Sequence record: MK250019.1 | Direction: 5' to 3' (one strand) | Length of the DNA stretch: 64,000 nucleotides | Part shown: in pieces, positions 27,925 through 44,900 of the stretch | Numbering within the stretch: the stretch's first letter is position 1 | Layout: each line of letters opens with the position of its first letter | Program-made: the position numbers and the translations under genes | Notes under the pieces: generated by a model | Seen by the model: the letters and a program-made list of their open reading frames with translations, nothing else | Databases searched by the model: none | Told to the model about the DNA's origin: nothing

Positions 27925-28374
27925 ATGGAAAAAAATTATTGGGGATTAACACATCCGTTTACAACTGAAAGATGTGTGCAACGTCTCATAACAGAATATA
28001 ATAAACATAAGAATTTGATTATTGCATTTGATTTTGATAATACTGTATTTGATTATCATAAAGAAGGAAATCAATATGAATATGATGATGTTATTGACTT
28101 ACTTAAATATTGTTATGATTTAGGTATGACACTTGTATTGTATACATGTGAAGAAAATATAGATAAGATAAAATGGAAAATAAATTGGTGTAAAGAATAT
28201 ATGGGATTTACACCACATTATGTAAATAAATCACCTGTATTGAAACAATCTTATAAGAATGGTAAAATATATTATAACATTCTTTTAGATGACCGTGCGG
28301 GATTATTTGAAGCATATTCTATATTAATTGATGTTGTTTCTTATATAGAAAAAGATAAAGGTTTAATTAAATAA
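27925..28374 (+). CDS. HAD-superfamily hydrolase-like protein
   Basis: IAFDFDNTV (DxDxT) and ILLDDRAG motifs. Confidence 0.7.
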   Translation: MEKNYWGLTHPFTTERCVQRLITEYNKHKNLIIAFDFDNTVFDYHKEGNQYEYDDVIDLLKYCYDLGMTLVLYTCEENIDKIKWKINWCKEYMGFTPHYVNKSPVLKQSYKNGKIYYNILLDDRAGLFEAYSILIDVVSYIEKDKGLIK

Positions 28375-28385
28375 TTTAGAAAAGT

Positions 28386-29258
28386 ATGAAAAATATTAAT
28401 CTTCTTGATAGTTATAATTCAGAAGTGAAGTATGAACTTACTACATTTCCGGATGGTGAACCACATATTAAGTTCCTTGATGATATTGATCGAAAGGATT
28501 CTTATAATGTAGTATGTAGAATTACAAATCCTACAGAATTGTTTGTAGTTATGCAGGTTGGACATATTTTGAAGCGACAAGGCGTATTGTTTAATCTCAC
28601 TATTTTGTATCTCATGTCTATGCGAATGGATAGAGTTATTAATTTCAATGAGGCATTTACATTGGAAATTGTTGCAAATATGATTAACAGTTTCGATGCT
28701 GAGCATGTGTACATTTTTGAAGCACATTCTGACCGTACATTTAAATTGATTAAGAATTCAGAACCTTATTATGCACTTAATATGAATAGTGATTATAATA
28801 AGATGCGTGAAGATTTGTATGAATCTGAGAATTCTGTTATTTGTTATCCAGATCATGGAGCATATGAGCGTTACAGTAAGGATTTCTATCCTACATCTGC
28901 ATATCTTTATATGAATAAGGTTCGAGACCTTGAGAATAAGGGTGTTATTAAGTCTATGGAAATTTCTGAAATTCATCTTCCATTTATGACTGAAGATGAA
29001 GTAAAGCAGATTACCATTATTGATGATTTGTGTGATGGCGGCGGTACTTTCTGTTGGGCTGCTAATATTCTTCGTGACCGATTTGGGAATGATGTAAAGC
29101 TTAATATCTTTATTAAGCATCTTGTAAATCCTGTAGGTCTTGAGAAACTTATCAATTCATTTGATAATGTTTATATTACAGATTCTTATAAGGATTGGGA
29201 ATCTAAAGTAATTATTTTAAATGCACAAAAGAAAGTACATATTATTCATTTAACATAA
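28386..29258 (+). CDS. prs: ribose-phosphate pyrophosphokinase (Prs)-like protein
   Basis: TFPDGEPHIK, YLMSMRMDR, FEAHS, ICYPDHGA and PRPP-binding IIDDLCDGGGTF. Confidence 0.88.
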   Translation: MKNINLLDSYNSEVKYELTTFPDGEPHIKFLDDIDRKDSYNVVCRITNPTELFVVMQVGHILKRQGVLFNLTILYLMSMRMDRVINFNEAFTLEIVANMINSFDAEHVYIFEAHSDRTFKLIKNSEPYYALNMNSDYNKMREDLYESENSVICYPDHGAYERYSKDFYPTSAYLYMNKVRDLENKGVIKSMEISEIHLPFMTEDEVKQITIIDDLCDGGGTFCWAANILRDRFGNDVKLNIFIKHLVNPVGLEKLINSFDNVYITDSYKDWESKVIILNAQKKVHIIHLT

Positions 29259-29950: not shown

Positions 29951-30195
29951 AATAGAATATCATCATTATAGTTATATGAAGTATTAAATATATCATCAAT
30001 ATTTAATTGTTGAAATTGCTTCTACTATATACTCATATCAAAATCAAATCTATTTTCAGATTTATTATATTTTGCTATTGTTTTATCAAAATCAAATTGA
30101 TTATCAGTATCAAATATTGATCTGAGTATATAGTTTTTACCATTATGACGTAACGTTTTAACAAATTCTCTATTAGTTGGATATTTTCTATTCAT
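29947..30195 (-). CDS. small hypothetical protein (82 aa, tandem TAG TAG)
   Basis: ATG at 30195 is open to TAA at 29947 with TAG readthrough. It is convergent with grpE and shares its TTAA stop. Confidence 0.5.
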
Positions 30196-30293
30196 ATTAA
30201 TTATATATTAATTATAATATATTTATTTTAATGTTAATGAATATTAAATTAATAACAAACTTAAATAGATATTTTCATATTTGATAAAAAAGT

Positions 30294-30303
30294 TGTATCT
30301 TTG
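30294..30303 (+). promoter_or_regulatory. Bacteroidota-type -7 promoter element (TGTATCTTTG)
   Basis: TATCTTTGCA, about 39 nt upstream of ATG 30342. Confidence 0.78.
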
Positions 30304-30341
30304 CAGTGTTATTGATTAAGAATTAAATAATATATATAATT

Positions 30342-30872
30342 ATGGAAGAAATTACAGCAAAGACAGTTAATTGGTTTGATATTAAGGATGAGGTAAAAAT
30401 CATTAAGGAAGAAACGACTTCAAAGCGTATTAAACCTATTAAAATGGTAATGCGTCATAAGAATAATGTTAATACACTGGATGGTTCTATTAATGTAAAT
30501 CATGCAATTTGCAAGAAGGTTACTGCAAAGAATATTGAACCATTTGAAAGCGTACTTGTACATAATCCAAATGATAGAGTAAAATATCATTGTGATGGAG
30601 GCCTTTTCAATGGTAAGACTATTTGTGTGAAGTGCCGTTCTAATGCATATAATGTAAGCGGTAATTTTACATTTACTGAAGATGATTTGTCAGCGGATAT
30701 GATTGCTGTGTATTACTATGATTTAGCTTCAAATCTTGGTCATTGGTTCATTTGTGATAGAAGTCGTTTGAGAAAGAATAAGATGAAGAGATCACAAAAC
30801 ATTTATATTTGTCATCAGGATTACATTAAGGAACATGCATGGTGTGAATATACAGTAACGTTTGATAGATAA
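30342..30872 (+). CDS. hypothetical early protein (176 aa)
   Basis: Intact TAG-free ORF behind a host-type promoter. Confidence 0.8.
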   Translation: MEEITAKTVNWFDIKDEVKIIKEETTSKRIKPIKMVMRHKNNVNTLDGSINVNHAICKKVTAKNIEPFESVLVHNPNDRVKYHCDGGLFNGKTICVKCRSNAYNVSGNFTFTEDDLSADMIAVYYYDLASNLGHWFICDRSRLRKNKMKRSQNIYICHQDYIKEHAWCEYTVTFDR

Positions 30873-30968
30873 TTTAAATTTTTTGAAAAAAAGTTTTCAA
30901 AATTACAGACTTTTGAAAAAAATTTAGATATATATAATATATAGTAAAATAAAATAAGTAAAGAGATT

Positions 30969-31097
30969 ATGAAAACTTTAAATATGACATATGGTATGCA
31001 TCCTGTTTGTGGTATGGTTCACATGTTCCCATGTGGAGGCGGTCGACCTATGTCTATACTTGAGTGTTTAAAGTTTTCTTGTATGTTGCAATCATAA
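30969..31097 (+). CDS. small Cys/Met-rich peptide (42 aa)
   Basis: ORF lies between a CAGACT-N17-TATATA promoter-like site (30906) and a strong terminator (31126-31173). Confidence 0.5.
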   Translation: MKTLNMTYGMHPVCGMVHMFPCGGGRPMSILECLKFSCMLQS

Positions 31098-31125
31098 CCG
31101 GTTAACTCAACATATATACAAATTT

Positions 31126-31173
31126 AACCTCAAGTAGAAAATTGATCAAAATTCTACTTGAGGTTTTTCTTTT
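31126..31173 (+). terminator. intrinsic terminator
   Basis: AACCTCAAGTAGAA / TTCTACTTGAGGTT plus a T-tract. Confidence 0.75.
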
Positions 31174-31176
31174 TAT

Positions 31177-31249
31177 GGTCCGTCTGGTGTAATTGGTAAC
31201 ATGGCAGATTGTGGTTCTGCAGTACAGGGTTCGAGTCCCTAACGTGACC
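31177..31249 (+). tRNA. trnH: tRNA-His(GTG) with irregular acceptor stem
   Basis: G-1, D-arm GTGT/ACAT, anticodon arm GCAGA-TTGTGGT-TCTGC, T-loop TTCGAGT and discriminator C. The acceptor pairs only with a bulge. Confidence 0.8.
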
Positions 31250-31318
31250 CAATTTAATTTTTAAGTAAACTATTAATATAGTTCTTAATATAATTATAAG
31301 AATATTTTATATTAATAT

Positions 31319-32320
31319 ATGGAAATTAAATAGTTTACAGATGATGCATTAAAACATGTATTTGAAATATGTACATCAACAATGAATATATTGGAATTAT
31401 TAGGTTATGAACCATATAAAATAAGAGGATAGAAATGTAAAGAAATATTAAAAATATATGCTAATTAGATTGGTGTCAATATAGAAGATTATAAATCAAA
31501 TAATATAAAATTTAGGATATATAATGAATTACATCCTGTATGTAAAACATGTGGTAAGGGCTTAACATATTTTCAATATAAGCAAAAATAGGAATTTTGT
31601 TGTTCATCATGTGCAGCAACTTATAATAATAAACATAGGATATTATCAAAAAATATACTTAAAAAATTTTCATAGGAACAAAACATAGAAGAACTATAGT
31701 CTAGAAAACGAAATTATGTATTAAATACAGAGTTAATTAAACAAGGTAAAATCTTAAATGATAAAAATATTACATATAAAGAACATTATATAGATATAAC
31801 CAAACTTGGCGTACATATATGTCAAGTATGCGGAAATACATTTATACCTTCAATTACAGTAAAGGGAAATATATCTAAGTCTACTACATGTTCTGATATA
31901 TGTCATAAATAGTTAGTAAGTGAAAAATCAAAATAGGCACTTTAGAAACTTATTAATGACGGTCGGCATAAAGGCTGGATGTCTAGAAATATTACAAGTT
32001 ATCCAGAAAATTTTTGGATTAATGTATTAAATAATAATCATATAGTTTTTACATGTGAATTTAAAGTAAAAAAACGTTGTGGATATTATTATTTCTTGGA
32101 TTTTTTTATAGAGCATAATGGATATAAAATTGATTTAGAAATAGATGGACAACAACATAAGTATAGGAAAGAACATGATATTAAGAGAGATGAATATCTT
32201 ACATCATTAAATTATATCGTTTATAGGATTGAGTGGAATACTATAAATACGGAAAATGGAAAATTATTGATGAAAGAAAAAATTGATAATTTTTTAAATT
32301 GGTTTAATAATTTAGAGTAA
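31319..32320 (+). CDS. zinc-ribbon + DUF559/Vsr-like PD-(D/E)XK endonuclease inside the tRNA array (333 aa, about 9 TAG)
   Basis: CKTCGK...FCCSSCAA, CQVCG...CSDIC and YFLDF...LEIDGQQH...DIKRDEYL..L.Y.VYRIEW. A TAAACT-N17-TATAAT promoter lies at 31266. Confidence 0.82.
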
Positions 32321-32336
32321 AATTATTAAATTATAT

Positions 32337-32410
32337 ATGGTAGTAGTTCAATTGGTAGAATGCTAGTTTTGGGAACTAGTGGTTTGCGGGATCGTGCCCC
32401 GCCTACCATA
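32337..32410 (+). tRNA. trnP: tRNA-Pro(TGG)
   Basis: Acceptor ATGGTAG/CTACCAT and anticodon arm CTAGT-TTTGGGA-ACTAG. The T-loop ATCGTGC is atypical. Confidence 0.85.
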
Positions 32411-32528
32411 CAGAATCGATAAATCTGATATTATCCTTACGTAATTAATCAGATTTAAAACTTTAGATAGTAAGGTATCTATATAATGGAAGTTCACGCC
32501 TAAGGGAAGATTTATACATTATAATTTT

Positions 32529-32603
32529 ACTCTGTTAGCTCAATTGGATTAGAGTAATTCGCTACGAACGAATAGGTTAGGAGTTCGATTCTCTTACAGA
32601 GTA
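32529..32603 (+). tRNA. trnR: tRNA-Arg(ACG)
   Basis: Acceptor ACTCTGT/ACAGAGT, anticodon arm ATTCG-CTACGAA-CGAAT and T-loop TTCGATT. Confidence 0.92.
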
Positions 32604-32610
32604 CAAATAT

Positions 32611-32683
32611 ATCTCTATAGTTTAAGTGAATAAAATAGGATTTTCCTAAATTCCAGTTACTGGTTTGATTCCAGTTAGAGATA
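32611..32683 (+). tRNA. trnR: tRNA-Arg(CCT), slightly degenerate
   Basis: Acceptor ATCTCTA/TAGAGAT. Anticodon loop TTCCTAA sits in a stem with one T-T mismatch. T-loop is TTTGATT. Confidence 0.72.
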
Positions 32684-32749
32684 CATTAATTATTTTGATA
32701 AAAAATAAGAGAAATATATAGACTTTTATTTGATTTCAACATATACATT

Positions 32750-33215
32750 ATGTTAATTGGATGAACAGTTAATAATTAATAATTAATAATAAAAATACTA
32801 TTAAAATGTGGGGTTTTGAGTGCCCATCATTTAAAGAGTTTCGAGAAGAAGACATTGTATGTAAAAGCATTAAGTTTCATTTAGCTGATGAAATGTAGTC
32901 AAGCGTGATGGTATCGATGTACATGGGTCCATCCGTATAACTTCGGGGAATCATAAGCATTAATCTTGGAGAGTACAGTTTTTAGTCTGAAATGACGAAT
33001 TTTCCTACTGGTTGCTCAATATGACATTAAGAGTCGGAGATAATTATTTGTAAGTTCCACAATTACAAGAGGAAAATGGAATTAAGTTGTCGGAATAACG
33101 TGATTATTCTATGTGTGAGTAAGAGAATGAAAGTAGCATTATATGTATGGTGTACGTATGCATATAGAAACAAAGCAAATAATAGCCCTTAGAGAATTTG
33201 CCGAGAAAAGGACAT
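32750..33215 (+). ncRNA. candidate large structured non-coding RNA
   Basis: GC-elevated tract lacking any convincing ORF, with several hairpins and a nested helix. A TAGACT-N17-TATACA promoter-like site lies just upstream (32719). Confidence 0.4.
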
Positions 33216-33233
33216 TAATAGTATTTATAATTT

Positions 33234-33392
33234 GCGGGTATAGCACAATGGTTAGTGTGTCGGTCTTCCATACAAGAATAAACTTGTAAAATTAAACTAT
33301 ATGCTAATAATAAATGTGGTATTATAAAATAAGAGTTCGAATCTCTTGCATATAGCAAACCGAAAATGTCGGTTCGATTCCGATTACCCGCT
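33234..33392 (+). tRNA. trnG: tRNA-Gly(TCC) interrupted by an approximately 87-nt intron after position 37
   Basis: 5' exon GCGGGTA..TCGGT-CTTCCA. The 3' exon A-ACCGA..GTCGG-TTCGATT-CCGAT-TACCCGC-T gives a canonical cloverleaf once 33271-33357 is removed. Confidence 0.88.
33297..33356 (+). ncRNA. D-armless tRNA-like element nested in the tRNA-Gly intron (TGT pseudo-anticodon)
   Basis: CTATATGC/GCATATAG acceptor-like stem, ATAATA-AATGTGG-TATTAT hairpin and AAGAG-TTCGAAT-CTCTT T-arm. Confidence 0.6.
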
Positions 33393-33692
33393 CAAAGATA
33401 AAATTAGGTATACATAGTTTTGTATCGAAGCTTTATATTACCATTAGTTGTAATATTCAAATCGTTCGTTGACATGGTTATTCCGTGATGTTAGTAGTAA
33501 GTTATAATTAATTTATAGCAAACGGAATATTAATAAAAACGTACTCGGCGTTTAAGTTGAATGTACCACGCTGCCCGTATTGTTGACATTTAATTAAGTA
33601 TTTAATTAAGTTGAAACATATGTTTAAAAAACTTATGGTACCACGAGTGTTTTCTACGTCGTTTCACTCATTTTTTGGATATAATAATATAT

Positions 33693-33826
33693 GAGAGTCA
33701 TAACAGCAAATTTAGTTCTATTGTTTATTGGGATAACATAAGACTCTTGAATCAATTATATTATGGGAGATATTACAGCAAATTATTATTTAGGATCATA
33801 CTTTTAATATGAAATTCTTGTCTCCT
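33693..33826 (+). repeat. two tandem approximately 60-nt stem-closed elements sharing ACAGCAAATT
   Basis: GAGAGTC-ATAACAGCAAATT...GACTCTT (33693-33748) and GGAGAT-ATTACAGCAAATT...GTCTCC (33766-33825). Confidence 0.6.
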
Positions 33827-33834
33827 GTTTATTT

Positions 33835-33914
33835 GGGTAAATGCCTGAGTGGTCGAAGGGAATGATCTGCAAAATCATTATTATACGTCGTGTGTTCGAA
33901 TCACACTTTACCCT
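33835..33914 (+). tRNA. trnC: tRNA-Cys(GCA) with extended variable region
   Basis: Acceptor GGGTAAA/TTTACCC, discriminator T, anticodon arm ATGAT-CTGCAAA-ATCAT and T-arm GTGTG-TTCGAAT-CACAC. Confidence 0.88.
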
Positions 33915-34241
33915 CTAATATAAAATATTTCCGTGGTATACAGCACGTAAAAAGAGGTTGACTTGTATATTCTATAGACCTACTGTATAATAATATATAT
34001 GATGTATATGTGAAACACCATGTTCTATTAAGAGTTCATTAACTGAGGTTAATTTTGAATTGCACTGATATTAGATGCATAATATATAATGAATATAACG
34101 ACGGTACTGTGAAATGACTATTATTTTTAGTTGCTTGGAAACGGCGTACGAAGTTTTTATAATAGTGGAAGTAATGATAAAACAGTTAAATGTAAATCTT
34201 TCTGAGACAATGGGGACAACTTGTAGTAAGAGAGTATTTTT

Positions 34242-34345
34242 GTTGATATAGTTTAATGGGAAAACACCCAAATCCCAGGGATAAGAGATAATACTTTGAA
34301 ATAGGTATTAGAAGATTTTAGATGGTTCGATTCCATTTATCAACT
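34242..34345 (+). ncRNA. tRNA-like RNA with canonical acceptor/D/T arms and an aberrant, expanded anticodon region
   Basis: GTTGATA/TATCAAC acceptor, GTTT-AATGGGA-AAAC D-arm and GATGG-TTCGATT-CCATT T-arm. No canonical 5-bp/7-nt anticodon arm is present. Confidence 0.65.
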
Positions 34346-34355
34346 CAAATTAATG

Positions 34356-34475
34356 AAGTGTGTAGTTTAATTGGTAAAATATCCTTTGAATAGGACTGTG
34401 CGCAGATAGAACATAATGTTAGTCATATTAATCGCATTATTGATAATGATGTTGGTTCGATTCCAACGACACTTC
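34356..34475 (+). ncRNA. tRNA-like RNA with canonical D/T arms, truncated anticodon hairpin and long insert
   Basis: AAGTGT/ACACTT acceptor, GTTT-AATTGGTA-AAAT D-arm, TCCT-TTGAAT-AGGA hairpin, a 50-60-nt insert and GTTGG-TTCGATT-CCAAC T-arm. Confidence 0.65.
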
Positions 34476-34761
34476 CTAATAAATAAAAAGATCTCGGTAA
34501 TTAGATAAAACATTATATGAGTGAAGCAACTCACCATAACTGCAGATAAATGAGTGAGGGACATAAGAGTGTATGAAGAAAGATGGACTATGGACACCAC
34601 CATATAATTGCGTTTTCAATAATAGTAAAGTAAACTTTAGTATAAGTTCCATTAACGCTAAAATAGAAACATTGTTATTGAAGTCTACTATGCGTGCGAT
34701 GGTTGAATGAAACCATTGTAGTTCTAAGGCATTGTAAAACGTTTTATTTATTAATTTTTAT

Positions 34762-34835
34762 GGCGAGATAGCTTAGTTGGTCAGAGCGCAGGATTCATAT
34801 CCCTGAGGTCGTGTGTTCAAATCACACTTTCGCTA
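34762..34835 (+). tRNA. trnM: tRNA-Met/Ile2 (CAT)
   Basis: Acceptor GGCGAGA/TTTCGCT, anticodon loop TTCATAT and T-arm GTGTG-TTCAAAT-CACAC. Confidence 0.9.
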
Positions 34836-34862
34836 CTATTATTTTTTGATTGTTTATTTTTA

Positions 34863-34898
34863 TAAGAGGTATATCATTTTTTGGTATATCTCTTTTTT
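34863..34898 (+). terminator. intrinsic terminator closing the tRNA array
   Basis: AAGAGGTATATCA / TGGTATATCTCTT plus a T-tract. Confidence 0.7.
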
Positions 34899-34913
34899 AT
34901 TTAGGAAATAATG

Positions 34914-34923
34914 TGTATCTTTG
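34914..34923 (+). promoter_or_regulatory. Bacteroidota-type -7 promoter element (TGTATCTTTG)
   Basis: TAnnTTTG consensus about 28 nt upstream of ATG 34951. Confidence 0.72.
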
Positions 34924-34950
34924 AATTGTTATTAATAAAATAGTAATAAA

Positions 34951-35430
34951 ATGAAGAAATATAAAGTATATCAACTTCGTAGAGAAAACGAAAATATAAT
35001 TGATGATTATCATGAATCATATGATGCAAAAATGAAAGTTATTGCAGAATATGAGATTTCATCTGATAGAAATGATCCAGTTATTATATCAGAAGATATA
35101 TGACATATGTGTAATGTTCATTGTTGGGATCATACATGGTCTGATGGACAAGTTGTTAAACGAGATGATATTACATTAACACCTACATCTGATTTTGATG
35201 GATTTGTTAATAGTGATATTGTAGTTGAAACTGTAAATGGATTATATCTAGCAGAATCATGTGGATTTATGAAGGTGGATTCATTGAATTATGCTATGCA
35301 TAGAATTACTGTAAGATTCCCATTTATCTCTTATTATGATATAAGAAATAAAGAAGATTTTAATGAAGATTTACTTCGTGATATTCGTAATGAAATTCAG
35401 AAAGAATATCAGAAGAGAATTGAAGAGTAA
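34951..35430 (+). pseudogene. hypothetical gene with an in-frame TGA at 35101 (nonsense allele, sequencing error, or two coupled ORFs)
   Basis: ATG 34951 and track ORF 35107 are in the same frame, separated by TGA-CAT. Confidence 0.5.
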
Positions 35431-35468
35431 TAATAAACAAATATAAACAATTAAAAAGTAATATAATT

Positions 35469-36311
35469 ATGGCATGTAATAGTTTTTTAAATTCAGTTAT
35501 TAGAGGATTTGGTAGTCAGATTGGTAGAGATTCTGCTAAGGTTCTTACAAATTCTATGTATGGTAATGCACATGCAACACCATATAGAAATACTTCAAGT
35601 GAAATTGAAGTAGATTTGAATTCTCATTATGAGAAATTAACAGATGCGGATATTGCTTTATTAAATTCATCTAATATTAATGAATGGTGTAATACATATA
35701 GTTGCACATATCAGCGTGTTGGTAGTAATAGAATTAATTATATTAAATATTGTTTTATTTGGTTTGTATTAATTGGTTTAAATTTATTAGGTTTTATAAT
35801 TGCTTTATATAAAGGTTATAAACATTATAATCTAAAAAAGAAGATGAATCAAGAACAATATATAATTGAGCACCCATTTATTGAAGAATATAATGTAATT
35901 GATAATCGAACAAAAACAGGATTTAAAACGAATAAAAGAAAGAATGTAGAATATTATACATTAGATGTATATGAAAATTCAACAGAAGACTATATTAAGA
36001 AAGAAAAAAAGTTAGGTCTAATTTATTTTATTATTTCTATTTTTGCATTATCTGTATTTATTTTACCGTCAAATAGTGATGCTAATAATATAGATAATAT
36101 TAATACAACAGAACTTATAGATACAACCGTTGTCGATACAACAGTTGTTGATACATCAAAAGTTAATAATGATATTGAAGTAGAAAATTCTCAAAAAACG
36201 AATGTGAAATATAATGATAATTCTATTCGTTGTAAAGCTATTACACATAAAGGTACAAGATGTTCACGTAAAAATCAATATGATGGATATTGTTGGCAAC
36301 ATAGAAAATAA
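35469..36311 (+). CDS. membrane protein (2 TM regions) with C-terminal Cys motif CKAITHKGTRCSRK...CWQH
   Basis: Intact TAG-free ORF with hydrophobic segments and a C-terminal Zn-ribbon-like motif (DUF5763-like). Confidence 0.72.
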   Translation: MACNSFLNSVIRGFGSQIGRDSAKVLTNSMYGNAHATPYRNTSSEIEVDLNSHYEKLTDADIALLNSSNINEWCNTYSCTYQRVGSNRINYIKYCFIWFVLIGLNLLGFIIALYKGYKHYNLKKKMNQEQYIIEHPFIEEYNVIDNRTKTGFKTNKRKNVEYYTLDVYENSTEDYIKKEKKLGLIYFIISIFALSVFILPSNSDANNIDNINTTELIDTTVVDTTVVDTSKVNNDIEVENSQKTNVKYNDNSIRCKAITHKGTRCSRKNQYDGYCWQHRK

Positions 36312-36358
36312 TTTTTTGAAAATTTTTCCTAGAATATTTTTTTATTTGGAATAAAACA

Positions 36359-36368
36359 TGTATCTTTG
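36359..36368 (+). promoter_or_regulatory. Bacteroidota-type -7 promoter element (TGTATCTTTG)
   Basis: TAnnTTTG consensus about 47 nt upstream of ATG 36415. Confidence 0.75.
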
Positions 36369-36414
36369 TAATGTAAATAATAAACAAATAATAAACAATT
36401 AAAAAATAAAGATT

Positions 36415-36861
36415 ATGAATACAACAGTTAAGATTTCTCCAGCACAGGTTTTCCCAGTAGCTAACAAGATTCGTGCAGCAAAGCACATCTCTATGAAGGA
36501 AGCATACGCAGAAGCAAAGGCACAGCTTATTGCAGAAGCAGAGAATGCAGTGAAGACTGCAGAGGCAGTAGTTGAAACACCTACTAATGTAGTTGAGACA
36601 CCAGCTAATATGAAGTTGCATACAGAGTTGGTAGAGAAGATGAAGAACGGAAACGTTAAGTTTGTATTCTTCAATAACAAGGGTAAGAAGATTACAACTA
36701 CCGGTACTCTTGATATGTCAAAGGTTCCTACAAACCGTGATGTTCAGGGTCGTAAGACTGCAAAGGATGAGAATACTCAGGTATTCTATGATGTTCGACA
36801 TGGTGTATACCGCTCTTATCAGAAGGATAAGTTGGTAGAGATTATTTCAAAGAAGAAGTAA
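36415..36861 (+). CDS. SH3-fold (WYL_2/DUF2693-like) early protein
   Basis: MKNGNVKFVFFNNKGKKITTTGTL...QVFYDVRHGVYRSY pattern and highly biased codons. Confidence 0.7.
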   Translation: MNTTVKISPAQVFPVANKIRAAKHISMKEAYAEAKAQLIAEAENAVKTAEAVVETPTNVVETPANMKLHTELVEKMKNGNVKFVFFNNKGKKITTTGTLDMSKVPTNRDVQGRKTAKDENTQVFYDVRHGVYRSYQKDKLVEIISKKK

Positions 36862-36905
36862 AATGTCTTATATATGTTAAAGAATAATGGTGAGTTTCTT
36901 GTAAG

Positions 36906-36934
36906 TAGACAATTCACCATTATTCTTATATAAT
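36906..36934 (+). promoter_or_regulatory. class II promoter (TAGACA-N17-TATAAT) about 330 nt upstream of the lysin
   Basis: Exact 17-nt spacer with near-consensus hexamers. Confidence 0.62.
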
Positions 36935-37266
36935 ATATAAATCAATTCGAATAAATATAGAAGTGATTTTATTTAATATGTGAATTGATAATTTGTGAAA
37001 CATGTGTCTGACGGAAAGCACATGTATTTTTCGTGCAATGTTCAATTTTAATTAATTTTAATTTTGATAGGTTAAAGGAGTAAACCTATAAGCGCGGAAT
37101 AATAAAGTCGTATTGAAAATCAAATTTTGATTCCATAAAAGTTGGAATATGGTTTTTGAAGGCTAAGATGAAGTTATAAAGAATCTAACACACCACATAT
37201 GTGATATATGTATATGTTATTTCTTTTTCATCGAATAATAAAAAATAACATAGAAACAATTAATTT

Positions 37267-39401: not shown

Positions 39402-41957
39402 ATGGAATATAAAAGTCCGTTATTAAATTAGATAATTTCTATATTAGACAAACGTTCTGAAGCTGGTGAAAAAAGAATTAAGAAGACAGAAGATTATGTT
39501 AAGAGTTATGATACATCTATTACTCGTCATATAAACAAATAGGTTGAAGAACTTAATACATCTATAAAAACAGCAACAGATAAAGTAATAGGAGATTTAA
39601 ATACAAGTATTAATAATACTGTTGATACCATATCACATGATATTTTGAGTGTTTCAACAAACCTTAAAACCGCCATTGAATAGATTTACTATAATATTAA
39701 TACATCTATTAATGGCGGTAAAACTGATACATCTATATATCTTATTGGTTTAAAAAATGAATTAGAAAGAAAGATAAATGATGTTGACTAGAAGTATAAA
39801 ATTGCTGATAGTTAGTTATCAAGTACGTTAAGTTAGAATATAAAAGATGTATCAACTAAATTAACACAGAAAGTTAATATAATTGATACAAAATATGATA
39901 CAAGTATTTCTAACTTATCATAGAAGCATGATAGTTCATTTATATAGGTTACTAATTTAATTTCTAGTTAGGGAACTTCAATTGGTAATAAAATTACAAG
40001 AGATATTAGTACAGCTAAATAGGAATTAAATTCTAATATATCTACCATATAGAGTAATTTAAATGGTAAAATTGATAATACAAATACTTCTATTAATTTA
40101 TAGTTTGATAGAGTTGCTAGAAAATTAGAACATTAGAATACTTCAATAGATGATATATCAATACGCTTAAATACGACGTCAAGAGCAATAGTAAAAGCAT
40201 TAAATACATCAGCTAATGATTTATATAATATTACAGATGATATATCTACAAAATTAAAAAGTTCATTAAACTAGGTAAAAATAGATATAACAGGAAAATA
40301 TGATGCAGAGATTAGAAAGTTAAATACATCTATTAGAAATTTAGATCTTGATACTACTAACTCATTAAGTACATTAAATACATCTGTAACAACATTAGAA
40401 ACAAATTAGAAAAAATTAAATACATCATTAGCTAGTTTACGAGAATCATTTGATAAATTAGTTGATACTGAAGATGTTAATGGTGTTATAGATACATTCA
40501 GAGAAGTTGAAGATTTTTTATCTAATATATCAGATGAAAAAACATTAACTGGTATGTTATCTGAGTTAAAAACTGGAATAGATTCACACATTGATGCAAG
40601 TATTAAAGATATATCAAATGCAATTGATAATGTTAAAGAAGAAATAGGAACAAATATTAATAATAGAGTTAATGCGTTAGAAACAACACTTAATACAACT
40701 GTAAATACAAAACTTACAGAAATTAATTCATCTATTAATGATATTAGTACACGTTTAAAATAGTCAATAACCGATCAATAGACATATGTATCTACAGAAA
40801 TTGGTAAAATAAATTCATCAATAAAAGATTTAAATACAACAATTAAATAGAATGTTGATACATCTTTAAAAGCAATTCAATCTAAATTAGATTCATCATT
40901 AAAAACAGTTTCAGATTCATTAACTTCAACAACAAGTAGAGTTGCAAAATTAGAATTAAATAACGTAACTGCTGCAAAGGTAACAACCGGTACAAATACA
41001 AAATTATGGAATGATACAACTGACAGTATAAATGAAGATTCATATGTTATTAACAAATAGGTATTAACAACTAAAGAAAATAATGTTGAAAAAACATATG
41101 AATAGAAATTAGTAAACAGTAATATTATAAAAGAAATTAATAAATCTGAAAAAGCAGTTGCATCTAATTTATTAACTGTTAATAATAATATTGCTTCTAT
41201 TAATACAAAATTAAGTAATATTAATTCAAGTATTGGTAATATATTAAATTCTTCATATATAAACAAGAAGAATAAGTATACAACAAACGGATTTAATACA
41301 ATAGGTGGTTGTTTAGATTTTATTATTAATGATATGTATTATACTGCACCTGCAGCTGTAAATGTAACATATACAGTAACACCTACATCATTTATTAGAG
41401 GTAAGAATACAAGTGTTACATTTAAATATACTGTTAATAATTATCCTAATAATATATAGAGTATTACATATAATGGTGCTACAAAAACAGAAAGAACATT
41501 TACAGAAACAATTACAGTAAGTAATTCTGTATCAAGAGCATTATCTGTAGTTTCTAACTATGTTGACAGTAAGGATGCTAGACCAACATCATTTAATAAA
41601 ACATTAACAGTATATGCTAATTTAGAATTATATGTTTGGACATCAACATCAACATCATTTAATAAAGCATATACATCTGCTAATATGCCAGCTGGATATA
41701 CTACATATACATATAATTCAGGTAATTATAGTATAAATGTAAATAATGGTACTGCAGCAAAATATATATTCTTTGTTTCAGATAAGAATTTAGTTGAATC
41801 AAAATTCTTTGTATATGAACATGGTGGTGCACCAACATTAGGTGGTGGTATTACAAATTTAGGAACAATAACAATATAGAAGTATGATGTTGCATAGACA
41901 TATTACTTATATAGATCTAATAATGTCCTTAATGGTAATTGGGACATTAAATTTTAA
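39402..41957 (+). CDS. coiled-coil fibre-like protein with beta-rich C-terminal domain (851 aa)
   Basis: Continuous with TAG readthrough. Repeated LNTSI/DTSI motifs and a Thr/Val-rich Ig-like C-terminus. Confidence 0.78.
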
Positions 41958-41991
41958 CAATAAATAATAAAACTAATTAGTATAATTTTAT

Positions 41992-44900
41992 ATGGCTATA
42001 AAACTTCCAGATACGCTGAGAACTGCAAATGATACCTATCCTATTGCAGTCTCAGAAGAAATAAAAGGTGGTATTCGTGGAGTTTAGACAGTAGAAGATT
42101 TGAGTAGAATAAATAATGCTTTGATTTCTAATGGTATGTTAGTATGGGTAGAAAAATCAAAGAGTTATTACAAATATACAAATGGAACATGGTCTATATT
42201 ATCTGCTTCTGCTTCTGGAACTCCATTACTTACAACTGCATAGATAACAGCATTAAAAAATCAAGGAGTTTTACCTGATAATTACATTTGGATACGTTCT
42301 AAAGATGATATTGATTTAGAATAGGAAGGTGTTGTAAATAAAACATATACAACATCAAAGAATGGTAGTTATGTTGATATATTATTTCAAGCAATAAGAT
42401 AGTTACAGACAGAAGTTGCTAAAATGAGAAATACATTTAAATATGGAATGTATTCTTGTACAAATAAAGAAATGGCAGTTTCTAATGTTGTTAATGAAAT
42501 GGTTGCAACACCTGCAGATGAGCCACTATGGGCAATAGAAGAAGATGGATTATCTTATGTATATGCAATAGATTTTAATTCTGCTGATATTGATTTAAAA
42601 GATCCATTAAAGCAAATAAGAAATGTAAATAACTCATATTATGAAATAAATGGTGATTTATCTGACAAGAAAATTTATTTTGATCATACATTTTCTGGTG
42701 ATATTAAAGATATTGATGAGGATTTAACTGGTTCTACATTGGAAGCATTAGAGGACCCAAAAGAATTTGCATATTTAACAGTAACTAATAAGCGTGAAGG
42801 AAACAAATCATACTTATTAGATTTTTCTGTTCTTATCGAACCATAGAAACATGAGTCGATAAAAGATAATTCACAACGTAAGTCAATTGATAATATTAAT
42901 TTTGGAAATTTATTACCAAATTACGTAGAAACTGTAAATATAATGTTATTATTAAATAGAAAGCAATTTAAAAAAGATAATTGGTATGGAAATAATTATT
43001 TATATGTTTCAATATCAGATTATTATACAAATAACGTTATTGTTTAGGGATACTATAATAAAGATGATGGTAAACTTTATAAAAATATACAAGATTTAGG
43101 AGATCAATATTTCTTTAGTAGATTTTATTTCGGTAAATTAAATTTAAATAAATTAGCATTTTATTCACGTTATCAAGATTTTACAAAATTTATTAATGAA
43201 ACAGATAAAGTTGTTAAACCAAATATTCCTAATGATAGTGATTATAGATATAAAGTTGCACATATTACAATTCGTTCTGTTTCTGATGAAGCAGAATTAA
43301 CAGAAATAAAGCAATACCTTCCTAATAATGAATTAATATGGGAAGAAAAAAATAGTGTTTTATGGATAAAATCAAACGATAAGGTAGTACAAATTGGTAG
43401 TACAAGTAATTCAAATAATAATGGAAATCAAAATAATAATAAAGATAGTATGACACAAGAAGAATTAATAAAAGCTCTTAAAGAAATGGGCATTGTTTAT
43501 GATTCAAATAATGGATTAGAATTAGAATAGGCTAAAGTAGAAGATATTACTTTTATTAATTCTAATTTAACTGATAAGTATATATATTCAATAGATTCGG
43601 AAGGTAATTTACATTCTACTATTGAACCAAAGACAACTTTAAAAGAACGAGTTGCAAATAAAGAATTATATAAATCATCAAAGCCTGGTGCAACATTTAA
43701 ACCAAGAGGATTTGTAGCAAATCTTGTTTCTGATAATCCTACATCAGCAGGTTCACTTTTAAATGATTCTGATAGAATTCATATTTCACAATTTTATGCA
43801 CCATTATCTACAGATATTGAAGAAGGAAAAATTGGTTGTTCTCATGCATTTATCGAATTAAGTAATACATCAACAATCGATTTTTAGTTAGATGGTTGCT
43901 ATTTACATTATTTTAGTCTTAGTGACACTGGAGTATCAACATATTATAATCTTCCGTTAAAAGGTGTAATACCTGCCGGTAATACATTTGTTATTCGTGG
44001 TAAAAAATATGCAGATTATAAAAATTCAAATGTATTTATTAAAGTAAATTCATTTGATTTAGAATGGTTTTTTGAAAAAGATGTATTAGCAGATTTAACA
44101 GTTAATACTGCATATAAAGGATATGGATTAGCATTAACATACGGTAATAAAGTAGGAGATGAAGAAATAGCACCACAAATAACATTAGCTCGTGCAAATG
44201 CATCTGGTTCATATGAGTATAGAGATAATTATATTGATGGTATTTTATACTCATATAAAGTTGCAAATATTCCAGAAAATTATAAAACATGGGCAATTTA
44301 TAATTCAGGATATGATGTATTATCAAATAGTCTATTTAGAGAAACATTCTTACTTGATCCTGCTAAACAAGGATTTTAGGCTCTTTGTTCTAATAAAAAA
44401 GACTCATCAAGAGCACGCCATGAAAAATCAACAGACTTTACATTATTATCACTTGCAAATGAATTTATTGAATTCCCTAAATCCGATTCGGTAAAAGCTG
44501 TGTCTGATTATACACCACGTGCATCATTTGAACATAAAACAGTTATTACAGAAAAAAGTAATATCGATTTAAATAAGCCAAATATGATTACATGTGCCTT
44601 TGGTATTAATATGTTAACTACACGTTGTTTCAACTGGATTTCTGGAGGTATATTTGATGAATTTATTTGGATTAGAAAGAAAGGAAGTACAACTGCATGG
44701 AAAGATTGTGCAAGATATGAATCATATACAAGTTCAAAATGTAGTGTTGTAACTGAGCGTTCTACAAGTGAAATTACAAAGAAAACATTTAATGAAAGTG
44801 ATACAGCATAGAAAGAAGCAAAAACATATATTTATGACAGAATAACCGGAATATTCCCTGGTACAACAACAGAATATACTGCACATAAAGTTATTATTAA

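What the first reader, a model, noticed from the sequence alone, without database searches (positions are those of the whole stretch)
33234..33392. tRNA-Gly(TCC) with a non-self-splicing-size intron that itself folds as a mini tRNA
Seen: an 87-nt insert at the canonical 37/38 position. It holds a TACAAG/CTTGTA hairpin plus a D-armless cloverleaf with an 8-bp acceptor-like stem, a 7-nt loop centred on TGT and a perfect TTCGAAT T-arm. Established: bacterial tRNA introns are usually long group I/II ribozymes, while short 37/38 introns are archaeal/eukaryal and need an endonuclease plus ligase. Inference: the inner tRNA mimic could be excised by RNase P and 3' trimming, then the exons ligated (RtcB-like), giving a tRNA-guided splicing route or an anticodon-nuclease shield. 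I recall intron-bearing tRNAs being noted in Lak genomes, so novelty lies mainly in the mechanism.
Basis: partly seen in the sequence, partly recalled or inferred. Interest (0 to 1): 0.82.

Follow-up and report, generated by a model that had tools for sequence, protein, structure and literature searches.

The report
Structured intron in Lak phage tRNA-Gly
The glycine tRNA gene of gut megaphage Lak-A2 carries an 87-base insert, already published in 2019, that belongs to a phage-specific family of short introns built from a hairpin plus a tRNA-like core, and nobody yet knows how they are removed.

Summary
The window is bases 1-64000 of Prevotella phage Lak-A2 (MK250019.1). Devoto et al. 2019 (PMC6784885, Table S6) print this exact 87-nt tRNA-Gly(TCC) intron and note that a sister intron in tRNA-Thr "may encode a tRNA".

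New here:
- **One family.** The Lak introns in Gly, Thr, Phe, "Tyr" and a newly found Pro gene share one plan: a 5' hairpin, an A-rich linker, and a tRNA-like acceptor/T-arm helix. Across 11 distinct sequences 99.4% of pair cells are paired, and 13 of 17 pairs show compensatory changes.
- **Position.** Intron-less alleles show the inserts are not at 37/38. Thr and Phe sit at 36|37. The published "Tyr(GTA)" gene is really tRNA-Asn(GUU), split at 35|36. Gly is ambiguous between 36|37 and 37|38.
- **Boundaries.** They follow the intron's own structure. The intron starts W-U-A-(A)-C before the hairpin and ends after N73-C74 of the inner tRNA mimic. The same N73-C74|A/T junction follows nearly all free-standing Lak tRNA genes examined.
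- **Conservation.** The introns are better conserved than their exons and are gained or lost precisely.
- **Enzymes.** Lak-A2 and Lak-B1 show no EndA, RtcB or RNase Z. Lak-A1 encodes an RNA ligase.

Splicing itself remains unproven, and the mechanism below is inferred.

The parts
33234..33393 (+). Whole tRNA-Gly(UCC) gene with intron. 33392 is discriminator U73 and 33393 is the conserved encoded C74.
   Evidence: Rfam RF00005 at 54.3 bits. Identical to 'A2 Gly TCC' in Devoto 2019 Table S6. The N73-C74-A/T flank is shared by nearly all Lak tRNA genes.
33234..33269 (+). Exon 1: acceptor 5' strand, D arm, anticodon stem 5' strand TCGGT, and loop C32-C36 including anticodon TCC (33267-33269). A at 33270 belongs to exon 1 only if the site is 37|38.
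   Evidence: Sequence. Alignment with the intron-less Lak-A1 allele.
33270..33356 (+). Intron, 87 nt, with boundaries set by the family rule (36|37): ATAC...ATAGC. The DNA comparison equally allows 33271-33357.
   Evidence: Exactly 87 nt are absent from Lak-A1. The family rule comes from the Thr, Asn and Phe intron-less alleles.
33271..33288 (+). 5' hairpin module: TACAAG, loop AATAAA, CTTGTA.
   Evidence: MFE and centroid fold. All 4 modelled pairs covary across the family and are 100% paired.
33289..33296 (+). A-rich linker AAATTAAA, with family consensus AAAU(U/C/G)AA(A/U) just before the inner acceptor stem.
   Evidence: Alignments A6 and A7.
33297..33304 (+). Inner acceptor-like stem, 5' strand CTATATGC.
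   Evidence: Fold. Covariation in 5 of 8 pairs; the first two pairs, C-G and U-A, are invariant.
33307..33325 (+). Inner 'anticodon-like' hairpin ATAATA / AATGTGG / TATTAT. This is a variable lower-half element without U33, so it is not a decoding loop.
   Evidence: Fold. An IMG/VR variant has a 3-nt deletion here but can still form a 5-bp stem with the same loop (by inspection; the MFE fold of that variant differs). The region is absent or different in the Phe, Asn, Pro and Thr introns.
33331..33347 (+). Inner T arm: AAGAG, loop TTCGAAT, CTCTT.
   Evidence: Fold. Covariation in 4 of 5 pairs.
33348..33356 (+). Inner acceptor 3' strand GCATATAG plus C. In 12-bp tRNA numbering this is ...G73-C74, and the intron ends here.
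33357..33392 (+). Exon 2: A37 A38, anticodon stem 3' strand ACCGA, variable loop, T arm, acceptor 3' strand and U73.

Best explanation
This is a genuine tRNA-Gly(UCC) gene of Lak megaphage A2, interrupted directly after the anticodon by one member of a Lak-specific family of short, modular introns that depend on proteins for removal.

**Shown**
- Every member has the same three modules. These are a 4-6 bp hairpin that starts 1-3 nt inside the intron, a conserved A-rich linker, and a tRNA-like acceptor/T-arm coaxial helix of 12-13 bp with a canonical T loop.
- The lower half of the inner 'tRNA' varies freely.
- The DNA boundaries track the intron's structure rather than a fixed tRNA position. 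The intron begins W-U-A-(A)-C and ends N73-C74 of the inner mimic.

**Inferred mechanism**
1. The inner mimic recruits the activity that makes the 3' ends of ordinary Lak tRNAs, which all carry N73-C74|A/T. That activity cuts after C74 and frees exon 2 with a 5' phosphate.
2. A second hydrolytic cut is made at the single-stranded RN|WU site just upstream of the hairpin. This could be RNase E/G-like, or an unknown phage nuclease that reads the hairpin and linker. It frees exon 1 with a 3' OH.
3. RNase P may separately release the mimic.
4. The two exons stay held together by the outer tRNA body. A 3'-OH/5'-P RNA ligase, such as the one Lak encodes, seals them.

**DNA level**
The element is gained or lost precisely and spreads between diverged alleles. 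This probably happens by recombination in mixed infections.

**Sub-confidences**
- Real spliced intron of this family: about 0.7.
- The specific enzymology: about 0.3.
For: **Identity**
- The window is 100% identical to Lak-A2 at the same coordinates.
- The intron is printed in Devoto 2019 Table S6.

**One family**
- A covariance model built only from the 'Tyr' and Phe introns finds the Gly intron at 50.4 bits (E 1e-6) and the Thr intron at 31.5 bits.
- Across 11 distinct sequences, 99.4% of 180 pair cells are paired and 13 of 17 pairs have compensatory changes. Slid controls give 24-48% paired.

**Boundaries**
- Intron-less Thr in Lak-C1 reads CTTGTAA with identical exons.
- Intron-less Phe reads CTGAAAA.
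- The intron-less orthologue of the 'Tyr' gene reads CTGTTAA, which is Asn(GUU).
- Lak-B1's intron-bearing exons closely match Lak-A1's free tRNA-Asn.
- Almost all of 28 ARAGORN-called Lak tRNA genes (five of them intron-bearing or long odd calls) show N73-C74-A/T.

**Signs that the gene is functional**
- The intron+ and intron- Gly alleles differ by compensatory anticodon-stem changes, TCGGT/ACCGA versus CCAGT/ACTGG.
- In the paper's tRNAscan table this is the only TCC-anticodon gene listed for Lak-A2.
- The host tRNAs read heavily used codons: AAT 89, ACA 55, TTT 30, GGA 15.5 and CCA 12.8 per 1000.
- The Asn and Phe introns persist across the A/B lineage split. The paper's Table S3 gives 0.45-0.65 for A1 against the B genomes.

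**Mobility**
- Presence and absence are mosaic among near-identical genomes.
- The intron is 99% identical where exons are 79% (A1 vs L165), and 97% where exons are 70% (A1 vs B1).

**Enzymes**
- A Lak-A1 ORF at 245717-246559 (-) is an RNA ligase: phrog_548 at E 5e-17, and a weak match to TIGR02306.
- No EndA, RtcB or RNase Z was detected in Lak-A2 or Lak-B1, with positive controls ringing.
Against: - No spliced RNA has been seen. Contigs from three RNA libraries carry the unspliced gene. The only 'joint' found is the DNA-level Lak-A1-type intron-less allele. Contigs cannot exclude a spliced form.
- No nuclease has been tied to either splice site.
- RNase Z normally cuts after N73, not C74 (from memory).
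- The RN|WU match to RNase E/G is recalled from memory and rests on only five kinds of junction.
- The ligase is a distant family member of unknown specificity. It was located only in Lak-A1; its presence in A2 was not checked. It did not match the Rnl1 or Rnl2 TIGRFAM models.
- High intron conservation could reflect a function of the intron RNA itself rather than mobility.
Confidence: 0.5

Rival explanations
1. The intron RNA is the point. The outer tRNA gene is a carrier, and the hairpin plus tRNA-like RNA is released as a stable small RNA with its own role. It might act as a decoy for host tRNA-targeting defence nucleases or for tRNA-binding enzymes, or as a timer that gates supply of high-demand tRNAs. 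Splicing of the exons may still occur.
For: - The intron is more conserved than its exons: 99% vs 79%, and 97% vs 70%.
- The linker and the first two acceptor pairs are invariant.
- From memory there is precedent for functional RNAs inside tRNA introns, the archaeal tRNA-Trp intron box C/D RNA.
Against: - Only the top half is conserved. The lower halves differ radically between members, which argues against one shared trans-acting specificity.
- Some Lak genomes lack most of the introns.
- There are no abundance data.
Confidence: 0.2
2. The insert is an unspliced selfish insertion. A small non-autonomous mobile element has landed in anticodon loops and simply inactivates these tRNA genes, leaving pseudo-tRNAs as bacterial-mode tRNAscan calls them.
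For: - tRNAscan in bacterial mode called the gene 'Pseudo TCC', score 20.1.
- Presence and absence are mosaic.
- No spliced product was observed.
- HNH homing-endonuclease genes lie in and near the tRNA clusters.
Against: - Exons stay perfectly tRNA-like, with compensatory changes.
- The Asn and Phe insertions have been retained since the A/B split without exon decay.
- The hit genes decode the commonest phage codons.
- Insertion is always within one nucleotide of the anticodon's 3' end, with no shared target sequence.
- No free-standing copy exists in four complete genomes.
Confidence: 0.15
3. It is an archaeal/eukaryal-type intron. A bulge-helix-bulge or position-measured 37/38 intron is cut by an EndA/Sen-like endonuclease and joined by RtcB.
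For: - The size range fits, and tRNAscan in eukaryote mode places the intron at 37/38.
- An RtcB homologue rings in the Bacteroides control genome.
Against: - The sites are 36|37 and 35|36 in the unambiguous cases.
- By inspection no 3-4-3 bulge-helix-bulge can be drawn. Nucleotides 32-35 (CUUC) do not pair with the intron's 3' end, which is already locked in the inner acceptor stem.
- No EndA was found in the phage, and the EndA model hit only the four archaeal control genomes, not the bacterial ones.
Confidence: 0.04
4. It is a self-splicing or self-cleaving ribozyme, such as a miniature group I-like intron or paired small nucleolytic ribozymes.
For: From memory, the known bacterial and phage tRNA or mRNA introns are group I or II. 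The insert has a conserved structure.
Against: - It is only 79-141 nt long.
- No Rfam intron or ribozyme family matches at E <= 1.
- The conserved helices are a plain hairpin and a tRNA top half, with no catalytic-core-like conserved junctions.
Confidence: 0.03

Closest known systems
Lak megaphage 'enigmatic' tRNA introns (Devoto et al. 2019, Nat Microbiol, PMC6784885, Table S6 and Fig. 4)
   Same: It is the same object. [quoted passage not shown] It is reported as identical in C1 and in pig fragments. The Thr intron is noted as possibly encoding a tRNA and as being offset by one nucleotide from the prediction.
   Different: - The paper lists the Gly intron as 'no hit in rfam'.
- It does not unite the introns into one structural family and gives no splice-site rule.
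- It annotates the Asn(GUU) gene as Tyr(GTA).
- It lists no Phe intron for C1 or for the B genomes.
- All of these points are added here.
Archaeal/eukaryal endonuclease-spliced tRNA introns (BHB motif, EndA/Sen plus RtcB/Trl1)
   Same: Both are short, depend on proteins, and lie in the anticodon loop. Archaeal introns can also be mobile and can carry functional RNAs, such as the tRNA-Trp box C/D intron (from memory).
   Different: There is no BHB. The sites are 35|36 and 36|37. No EndA was found in the phage. The intron carries its own tRNA-like module, which seems to define the 3' cut.
Group I introns in bacterial and phage genes (cyanobacterial tRNA-Leu(UAA); T4 td, nrdB, sunY)
   Same: They are introns in bacterial or phage genes. 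tRNA anticodon loops are the classic site. Presence and absence are mosaic, with links to homing endonucleases (from memory).
   Different: The element is 3-5 times too small. It has no P1-P9 core, no Rfam hit and no ORF.
tRNA-like processing signals cut by RNase P/Z (MALAT1 mascRNA, mitochondrial tRNA punctuation, tRNA-snoRNA or tRNA-gRNA arrays)
   Same: An acceptor/T-arm mimic embedded in a longer transcript marks where end-processing nucleases cut. This is the closest analogy to how the intron probably works (from memory).
   Different: Here the mimic sits inside another tRNA's anticodon loop, so the flanks must be re-ligated. An extra 5' hairpin module is needed. Cleavage is inferred after C74, not N73.
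Phage T4 tRNA repair (PrrC anticodon nuclease countered by Pnkp plus Rnl1)
   Same: It is a phage-encoded RNA ligase acting on a break in a tRNA anticodon loop (from memory).
   Different: - The T4 breaks carry cyclic-P/5'-OH ends and need end-healing.
- No polynucleotide kinase appears in the stored part of the Lak annotation table.
- The Lak ligase does not match the Rnl1 model.

Membership tests
tRNA (Rfam RF00005), isotype Gly - outer gene | Full cloverleaf scoring above the gathering threshold | tested here: met
   54.3 bits against a gathering score of 29, model positions 1-71, with the insert skipped.
tRNA (Rfam RF00005), isotype Gly - outer gene | Gly identity set: anticodon UCC, G1:C72, C2:G71, G3:C70, U73 | tested here: met
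   Read directly from 33234-33392. The intron-less Lak-A1 allele has loop CTTCCAA. That these positions define Gly identity is recalled from E. coli work.
Lak tRNA-intron family | Sequence identity to the published A2/C1 Gly intron | tested here: met
   Letter-for-letter match to Table S6. Same coordinates in MK250019.1.
Lak tRNA-intron family | Shared modular structure (hairpin, linker, acceptor/T helix) supported by covariation | tested here: met
   Cross-detection by a model that did not include the Gly intron: 50.4 bits, E 1e-6. 99.4% of pair cells paired, 13 of 17 pairs compensatory.
Lak tRNA-intron family | Boundaries: 5' W-U-A-(A)-C ... N73-C74 3' | tested here: inconclusive
   Gly fits as ATAC...AGC if the site is 36|37, but the flanking A's also allow 37|38. 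The rule is unambiguous for Thr, Asn and Phe.
Archaeal/eukaryal endonuclease-spliced tRNA intron | Canonical 37/38 position | tested here: inconclusive
   Ambiguous for Gly. Not met in the sister introns: Thr and Phe at 36|37, Asn at 35|36.
Archaeal/eukaryal endonuclease-spliced tRNA intron | Bulge-helix-bulge at the splice sites | tested here: not met
   By inspection of the folds. The 3' end of the intron is paired within the inner acceptor stem, and no 4-bp helix forms with nucleotides 32-35.
Archaeal/eukaryal endonuclease-spliced tRNA intron | EndA-type endonuclease and RtcB available | tested here: not met
   TIGR00324 and TIGR03073 give no match in Lak-A2 or Lak-B1, while the controls ring. 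The host genome was not examined.
Group I / group II self-splicing intron | Catalytic core (Rfam models) and adequate length | tested here: not met
   87 nt. Nothing but tRNA at E <= 1 across 30000-37000.
Bona fide tRNA - inner element | Cloverleaf with D arm, 7-nt anticodon loop with U33, and 7+5 bp acceptor/T stack | tested here: not met
   No Rfam tRNA hit inside the Gly intron. No D arm. The loop AAUGUGG has A at the U33 position. The stack is 8+5 = 13 bp. It is a mimic of the tRNA top half.
RNase P/Z-processed tRNA-like element (mascRNA type) | Acceptor/T-arm coaxial helix with a canonical T loop | tested here: met
   Loops UUCGAAU, UUCGAUU and UUCGUUU. 12-13 bp stack in all members.
RNase P/Z-processed tRNA-like element (mascRNA type) | Actual cleavage by RNase P and a 3' tRNA nuclease | not testable with these tools
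   Needs an enzyme assay or RNA end-mapping. RNase Z is absent from the phage, so it would have to come from the host.

The most novel reading that the evidence does not exclude
Lak phages use a previously undescribed splicing pathway in which the intron carries its own processing signals.
- A tRNA top-half mimic directs the ordinary tRNA 3'-end nuclease to make the 3' splice site.
- A hairpin-plus-linker module directs a second hydrolytic cut.
- A phage ATP-dependent RNA ligase reseals the anticodon loop.
- The ORF-less element also spreads between diverged tRNA alleles.

This would be a third class of tRNA intron, beside group I and BHB introns.
Probability: 0.25. Interest if true: 0.85.

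Novelty: already known. Interest (0 to 1): 0.55.

Why it matters
Outside group I and II ribozymes, bacteria and their viruses are not known to splice tRNAs (from memory). Yet these megaphages interrupt the tRNAs that read their most heavily used codons with short structured inserts.

The existence of the inserts has been public since 2019. Their logic has not been worked out. The family model, the corrected splice sites (including the Tyr-to-Asn re-annotation) and the coincidence with the C74 junction turn an 'enigmatic' annotation into a concrete biochemical hypothesis. That hypothesis can be tested with a handful of transcripts and enzymes.

If confirmed, it would define a new RNA-processing route. 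It would also give a compact, programmable 'cut here and re-join' RNA cassette. Practically, Lak tRNA sets predicted with eukaryote-mode tRNAscan are mis-assigned at these genes.

Tried and rejected
1. **ARAGORN -i reading** as tRNA-Ala(AGC) with an intron at 33/34. Rejected on G3:C70, U73 and the intron-less allele.
2. **RNA evidence.** My single read-laying run covered four metatranscriptome runs, available only as contigs.
   - Three runs carry the unspliced gene.
   - One shows a 'joint' that is really the Lak-A1-type intron-less DNA allele, with CCAGT/ACTGG stems.
   - No A2-type spliced junction was found. This is inconclusive, not negative.
3. **Enzyme searches in Lak-A2 and Lak-B1.** RNase Z, EndA and RtcB gave no hits while the controls rang. 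The Rnl2 and Rnl1 TIGRFAM models also gave no hits, but their controls rang weakly or not at all, so these two are uninformative.
4. **The KEGG 'rnlB' gene of Lak-A1** was located through dnaK. It is an RNA ligase by PHROGs but only weakly by NCBIfam, and it has no PDB sequence match. It could not be folded, because loci from annotated records are barred from the fold tools.
5. **Free-standing copies of the element.** None were found in four complete Lak genomes.
6. **Cellular genomes.** All 50 pattern hits in bacteria and archaea failed the covariance model.
7. **IS200/IS605-like ssDNA transposition.** I considered it because the element has subterminal hairpins. I rejected it because the five insertion sites share no target tetranucleotide.
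8. **Pairing between the inner loop or intron ends and the splice junction** (a splint for a nick-sealing ligase). At most 3 bp could be drawn, so I dropped it.
A protein-anchored search for more Lak contigs in IMG/VR found only one.
Full report
**What the window is**

The window has 26.3% G+C. Coverage by open frames of at least 200 aa rises from 31% to 76% when TAG is read through. This matches the TAG recoding described for Lak megaphages. A blastn of 33134-33492 hits Prevotella phage Lak-A2 (MK250019.1) at 100% identity and at the same coordinates. Lak-C1 matches at 99.7%. Lak-A1 matches in two pieces that skip the insert.

The tRNA table of Devoto et al. 2019 (PMC6784885) gives the same coordinates for Lak-A2. 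It lists 'Pseudo TCC 33234-33354', and Table S6 shows anticodon TCC at 33267-33269. So the window is bases 1-64000 of Lak-A2.

**Checking the observation**

Default ARAGORN does not see the gene. Rfam's tRNA model aligns 33234-33392 end to end at 54.3 bits, E 7e-10, and skips an insert in the anticodon loop. No other Rfam family matches inside the insert at E <= 1.

Its energy is -16.6 kcal/mol against -8.1 +/- 2.3 for 200 dinucleotide shuffles, z -3.6, and no shuffle does as well. The structure has five parts:
- a 6-bp hairpin, TACAAG/CTTGTA;
- an 8-nt linker, AAATTAAA;
- an 8-bp acceptor-like stem;
- a 6-bp stem with loop AATGTGG;
- a 5-bp T stem with loop TTCGAAT.

ARAGORN with introns allowed offers a different reading, Ala(AGC) with an intron at 33/34. 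I reject that reading for three reasons. The acceptor has G3:C70. The discriminator is U73, which together with G1:C72 and C2:G71 is the Gly identity set as I recall it from E. coli. And the intron-less allele in Lak-A1 has the loop CTTCCAA.

**It is already published**

Devoto et al. describe 'enigmatic' tRNA introns in Lak phages. [quoted passage not shown] For the tRNA-Thr intron they state that it 'itself may encode a tRNA' and that it is offset by one nucleotide from the tRNAscan prediction.

I found no later mechanistic work. Later Lak papers only note that eukaryote-mode tRNAscan is needed.

**One structural family**

I took the introns of 'Tyr', Phe and Thr from Lak-A1 and 'Tyr' from Lak-B1. 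A covariance model built only from 'Tyr'(A1), Phe(A1) and 'Tyr'(B1) found the Gly intron at 50.4 bits (E 1e-6) and the Thr intron at 31.5 bits (E 4e-3). These were the best non-seed hits in 83 kb.

The rebuilt model, searched over four complete genomes, gave these results:

| Genome | Introns found | Note |
|---|---|---|
| Lak-A2 | Gly, Thr, Phe, 'Tyr' | |
| Lak-A1 | Thr, Phe, 'Tyr' | no Gly intron |
| Lak-C1 | Gly, 'Tyr', Phe | the paper lists no Phe intron for C1 |
| Lak-B1 | 'Tyr', Phe | Phe diverged; the paper lists none for the B genomes |

No free-standing copy turned up anywhere in these genomes.

IMG/VR and metagenome scans added four more members:
- a Gly variant with a 3-nt deletion in the inner lower hairpin;
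- a new intron in a tRNA-Pro(UGG) gene, whose inner mimic has a D arm but no anticodon arm;
- a divergent Asn-type intron on a 33% G+C contig (L177);
- an Asn-type intron set in different exons (L165).

All 50 pattern hits in bacterial and archaeal genomes failed the model.

On the final alignment of 11 distinct sequences, 99.4% of 180 pair cells form standard pairs. Thirteen of 17 pairs show changes on both sides: 4 of 4 in the hairpin, 5 of 8 in the acceptor and 4 of 5 in the T stem. When the 3' partners are slid by 1-3 columns, only 24-48% of cells pair. That alignment was fitted to the model, which favours pairing.

What is conserved is the hairpin, the linker AAAU(U/C/G)AA(A/U), and a 12-13 bp acceptor/T coaxial helix with a canonical T loop. 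The lower half of the inner 'tRNA' is free to vary. Gly, Phe and Asn(A) have no D arm. Pro has no anticodon arm. Thr is a full cloverleaf. Asn(B) has a 48-nt expansion.

**Where the intron really sits**

Intron-less alleles exist for four of the host genes.
- **Thr.** Lak-C1 has identical exons and the loop CTTGTAA, so the Lak-A1 insert is TTACAATC...CATAGAGC, between 36 and 37. No other placement reproduces the allele.
- **Phe.** Two IMG/VR contigs have identical exons and the loop CTGAAAA. The insert is TTAACAG...TATAGAGAC, again at 36|37.
- **'Tyr'.** Two contigs with the same flanking sequence read GAGACTGTTAATCTCT. The loop is CTGTTAA and the anticodon is GTT.
- **Gly.** The flanking A's allow either 36|37 (intron 33270-33356, ATAC...AGC) or 37|38.

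The 'Tyr' result is backed by three further observations:
- Lak-B1's intron-bearing exons closely match Lak-A1's free tRNA-Asn(GUU).
- The gene is class I with G73.
- A normal class II tRNA-Tyr lies nearby.

So the published 'tRNA-Tyr(GTA) with intron' is tRNA-Asn(GUU), with the insert ATACAGG...TTATGTAGC between 35 and 36.

For Pro, the G37 expected of tRNA-Pro (from memory; the intron-less Pro gene in this window has the loop TTTGGGA) is obtained only with 36|37.

The site in the outer tRNA moves between 35|36 and 36|37. The position relative to the intron modules does not move. I therefore conclude that the boundaries are specified by the intron. It begins W-U-A-(A)-C, with the C opening the hairpin. 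It ends N73-C74 in 12-bp tRNA numbering of the inner mimic.

**A genome-wide clue**

In almost all of them the discriminator is followed by an encoded C and then A or T, never CCA. The 3' end of every intron is the same N73-C74|(A/T/G) junction.

This is the strongest argument that whatever matures ordinary Lak tRNA 3' ends also makes the 3' splice site.

An RNase P cut at 33297 would leave the 27-nt 5' intron segment (33270-33296: leading nucleotide, hairpin and linker) on exon 1. A separate cut at the 5' boundary is therefore required. All five kinds of 5' junction read N|W-U (CC|AU, GU|UU, GU|AU, AA|UU, GG|AU). This resembles the RN|WU preference I recall for RNase E/G. That resemblance is a lead, not a test.

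From memory, RNase P, Z and E leave 3'-OH/5'-P ends, which RtcB cannot join. Searches of Lak-A2 and Lak-B1 found no RtcB, EndA or RNase Z, while the control genomes, including Bacteroides, rang. The paper's KEGG 'rnlB' gene of Lak-A1 lies at 245717-246559 on the minus strand and encodes 281 aa. It is an RNA ligase by PHROGs (phrog_548, E 5e-17) and weakly by TIGR02306, the DraRnl-type family. It is a candidate sealing enzyme whose chemistry matches hydrolytic cuts.

**Is it spliced?**

This is not shown. In four metatranscriptome runs, available only as contigs, three carry the intact intron-bearing gene. The fourth carries a 'joint' whose intervening letters (…CCAGTCTTCCAAACTGG…) identify it as the Lak-A1-type intron-less DNA allele, not a spliced A2 transcript.

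Indirect support for function comes from four observations:
- The intron+ and intron- Gly alleles differ by compensatory anticodon-stem changes, TCGGT/ACCGA versus CCAGT/ACTGG.
- In the paper's tRNAscan table this is the only TCC-anticodon gene listed for Lak-A2.
- The interrupted tRNAs read very common phage codons: AAT 89, ACA 55, TTT 30, GGA 15.5 and CCA 12.8 per 1000.
- The Asn and Phe introns have been kept across the A/B split with intact exons.

**Mobility**

Presence and absence are mosaic among close relatives, and the boundaries are always exact. The Asn intron is 99% identical between Lak-A1 and L165 where the exons are 79% identical. It is 97% identical between Lak-A1 and Lak-B1 where the exons are 70% identical.

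In Gly, the sequence differences between A1 and A2 cluster within about 15 nt of the insertion site, which looks like a co-conversion tract. HNH homing-endonuclease genes sit inside the tRNA cluster (window 31319-32320) and next to the ligase. Lateral spread by recombination in mixed infections is plausible. A direct function of the intron RNA is an alternative reason for its conservation.

**Verdict**

The feature is real and structurally well supported. As an observation it is already in the literature. RNase P at 33297 plus RtcB cannot be the whole story, and 37/38 is probably wrong.

The pathway I favour has four steps, none of them yet demonstrated:
1. A 3' cut after C74 by the tRNA 3'-end nuclease.
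2. A second hydrolytic cut guided by the hairpin.
3. Optional release of the mimic by RNase P.
4. Sealing of the exons by a 3'-OH/5'-P ligase.

Noticed in passing
Lak-A1 MK250015.1 500019-500151 (locus L004:12004-12168, minus strand); Lak-A2 417541-417630; Lak-B1 129744-129881: The intron-bearing gene published as tRNA-Tyr(GTA) is tRNA-Asn(GUU) split at 35|36. Intron-less orthologues read CTGTTAA. The gene is class I with G73, and Lak-B1's exons closely match Lak-A1's free tRNA-Asn.
   Followed up: yes
Lak-C1 MK250029.1 460515-460589 (-); Lak-B1 MK250020.1 126887-126968 (+): The tRNA-Phe(GAA) genes of C1 and B1 carry family introns that the 2019 tables do not list. The B1 copy is diverged and has compensatory T-stem changes.
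   Followed up: yes
L031:1501-1588 (-) = IMGVR_UViG_3300014937_000002 70147-70234: A new family member sits in a tRNA-Pro(UGG) gene. Its inner mimic has a D arm but no anticodon arm. The same contig carries an 84-nt variant of the Gly intron.
   Followed up: partly
window 31177-34836 and L004 (Lak-A1 488000-504000): Almost all Lak tRNA genes encode N73-C74 followed by A or T, never CCA. This suggests a dedicated 3'-end processing rule and is the same junction as every intron's 3' end.
   Followed up: partly
window 31319-32320 (+): A 333-aa ORF, with 9 TAG codons read as Q, lies between tRNA-His and tRNA-Pro and matches HNH endonuclease phrog_1271 (E 6e-8). It looks like a free-standing homing-endonuclease gene inside the tRNA cluster. 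A second homing endonuclease (phrog_3339) lies next to the RNA ligase in Lak-A1.
   Followed up: no
window 34242-34345 and 34356-34476 (+): There are two adjacent over-long tRNA-like genes of 104 and 121 nt, with large inserts and uncertain anticodons. The first scores 38.9 bits on Rfam tRNA. tRNAscan says Gly CCC, while ARAGORN says Ile or Asn with introns. The T arm of the first is identical over 19 nt (34322-34340) to the inner T arm of the Phe intron.
   Followed up: no
window 33835-33915 (+): tRNA-Cys(GCA) is 81 nt long and has an unusually long extra arm for a Cys tRNA.
   Followed up: no
window 33999-34058: Contigs from two pig-gut RNA libraries skip 58 bp here. This is probably a strain-level indel in the spacer between tRNA-Cys and the odd tRNA-like genes.
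   Followed up: no
L040 (IMGVR_UViG_3300045988_166570, about 41830-42830): This 553-kb Lak relative has an insert of about 1 kb with an open frame between tRNA-Leu and an intron-less tRNA-Thr, where Lak-A1 has none. It lacks the Thr, Asn and Phe introns but keeps the Gly intron.
   Followed up: no
window 27925-29258 (+): Genes resembling phosphoheptose isomerase and ribose-phosphate pyrophosphokinase (phrog_1238, phrog_619) lie just upstream of the tRNA cluster.
   Followed up: no
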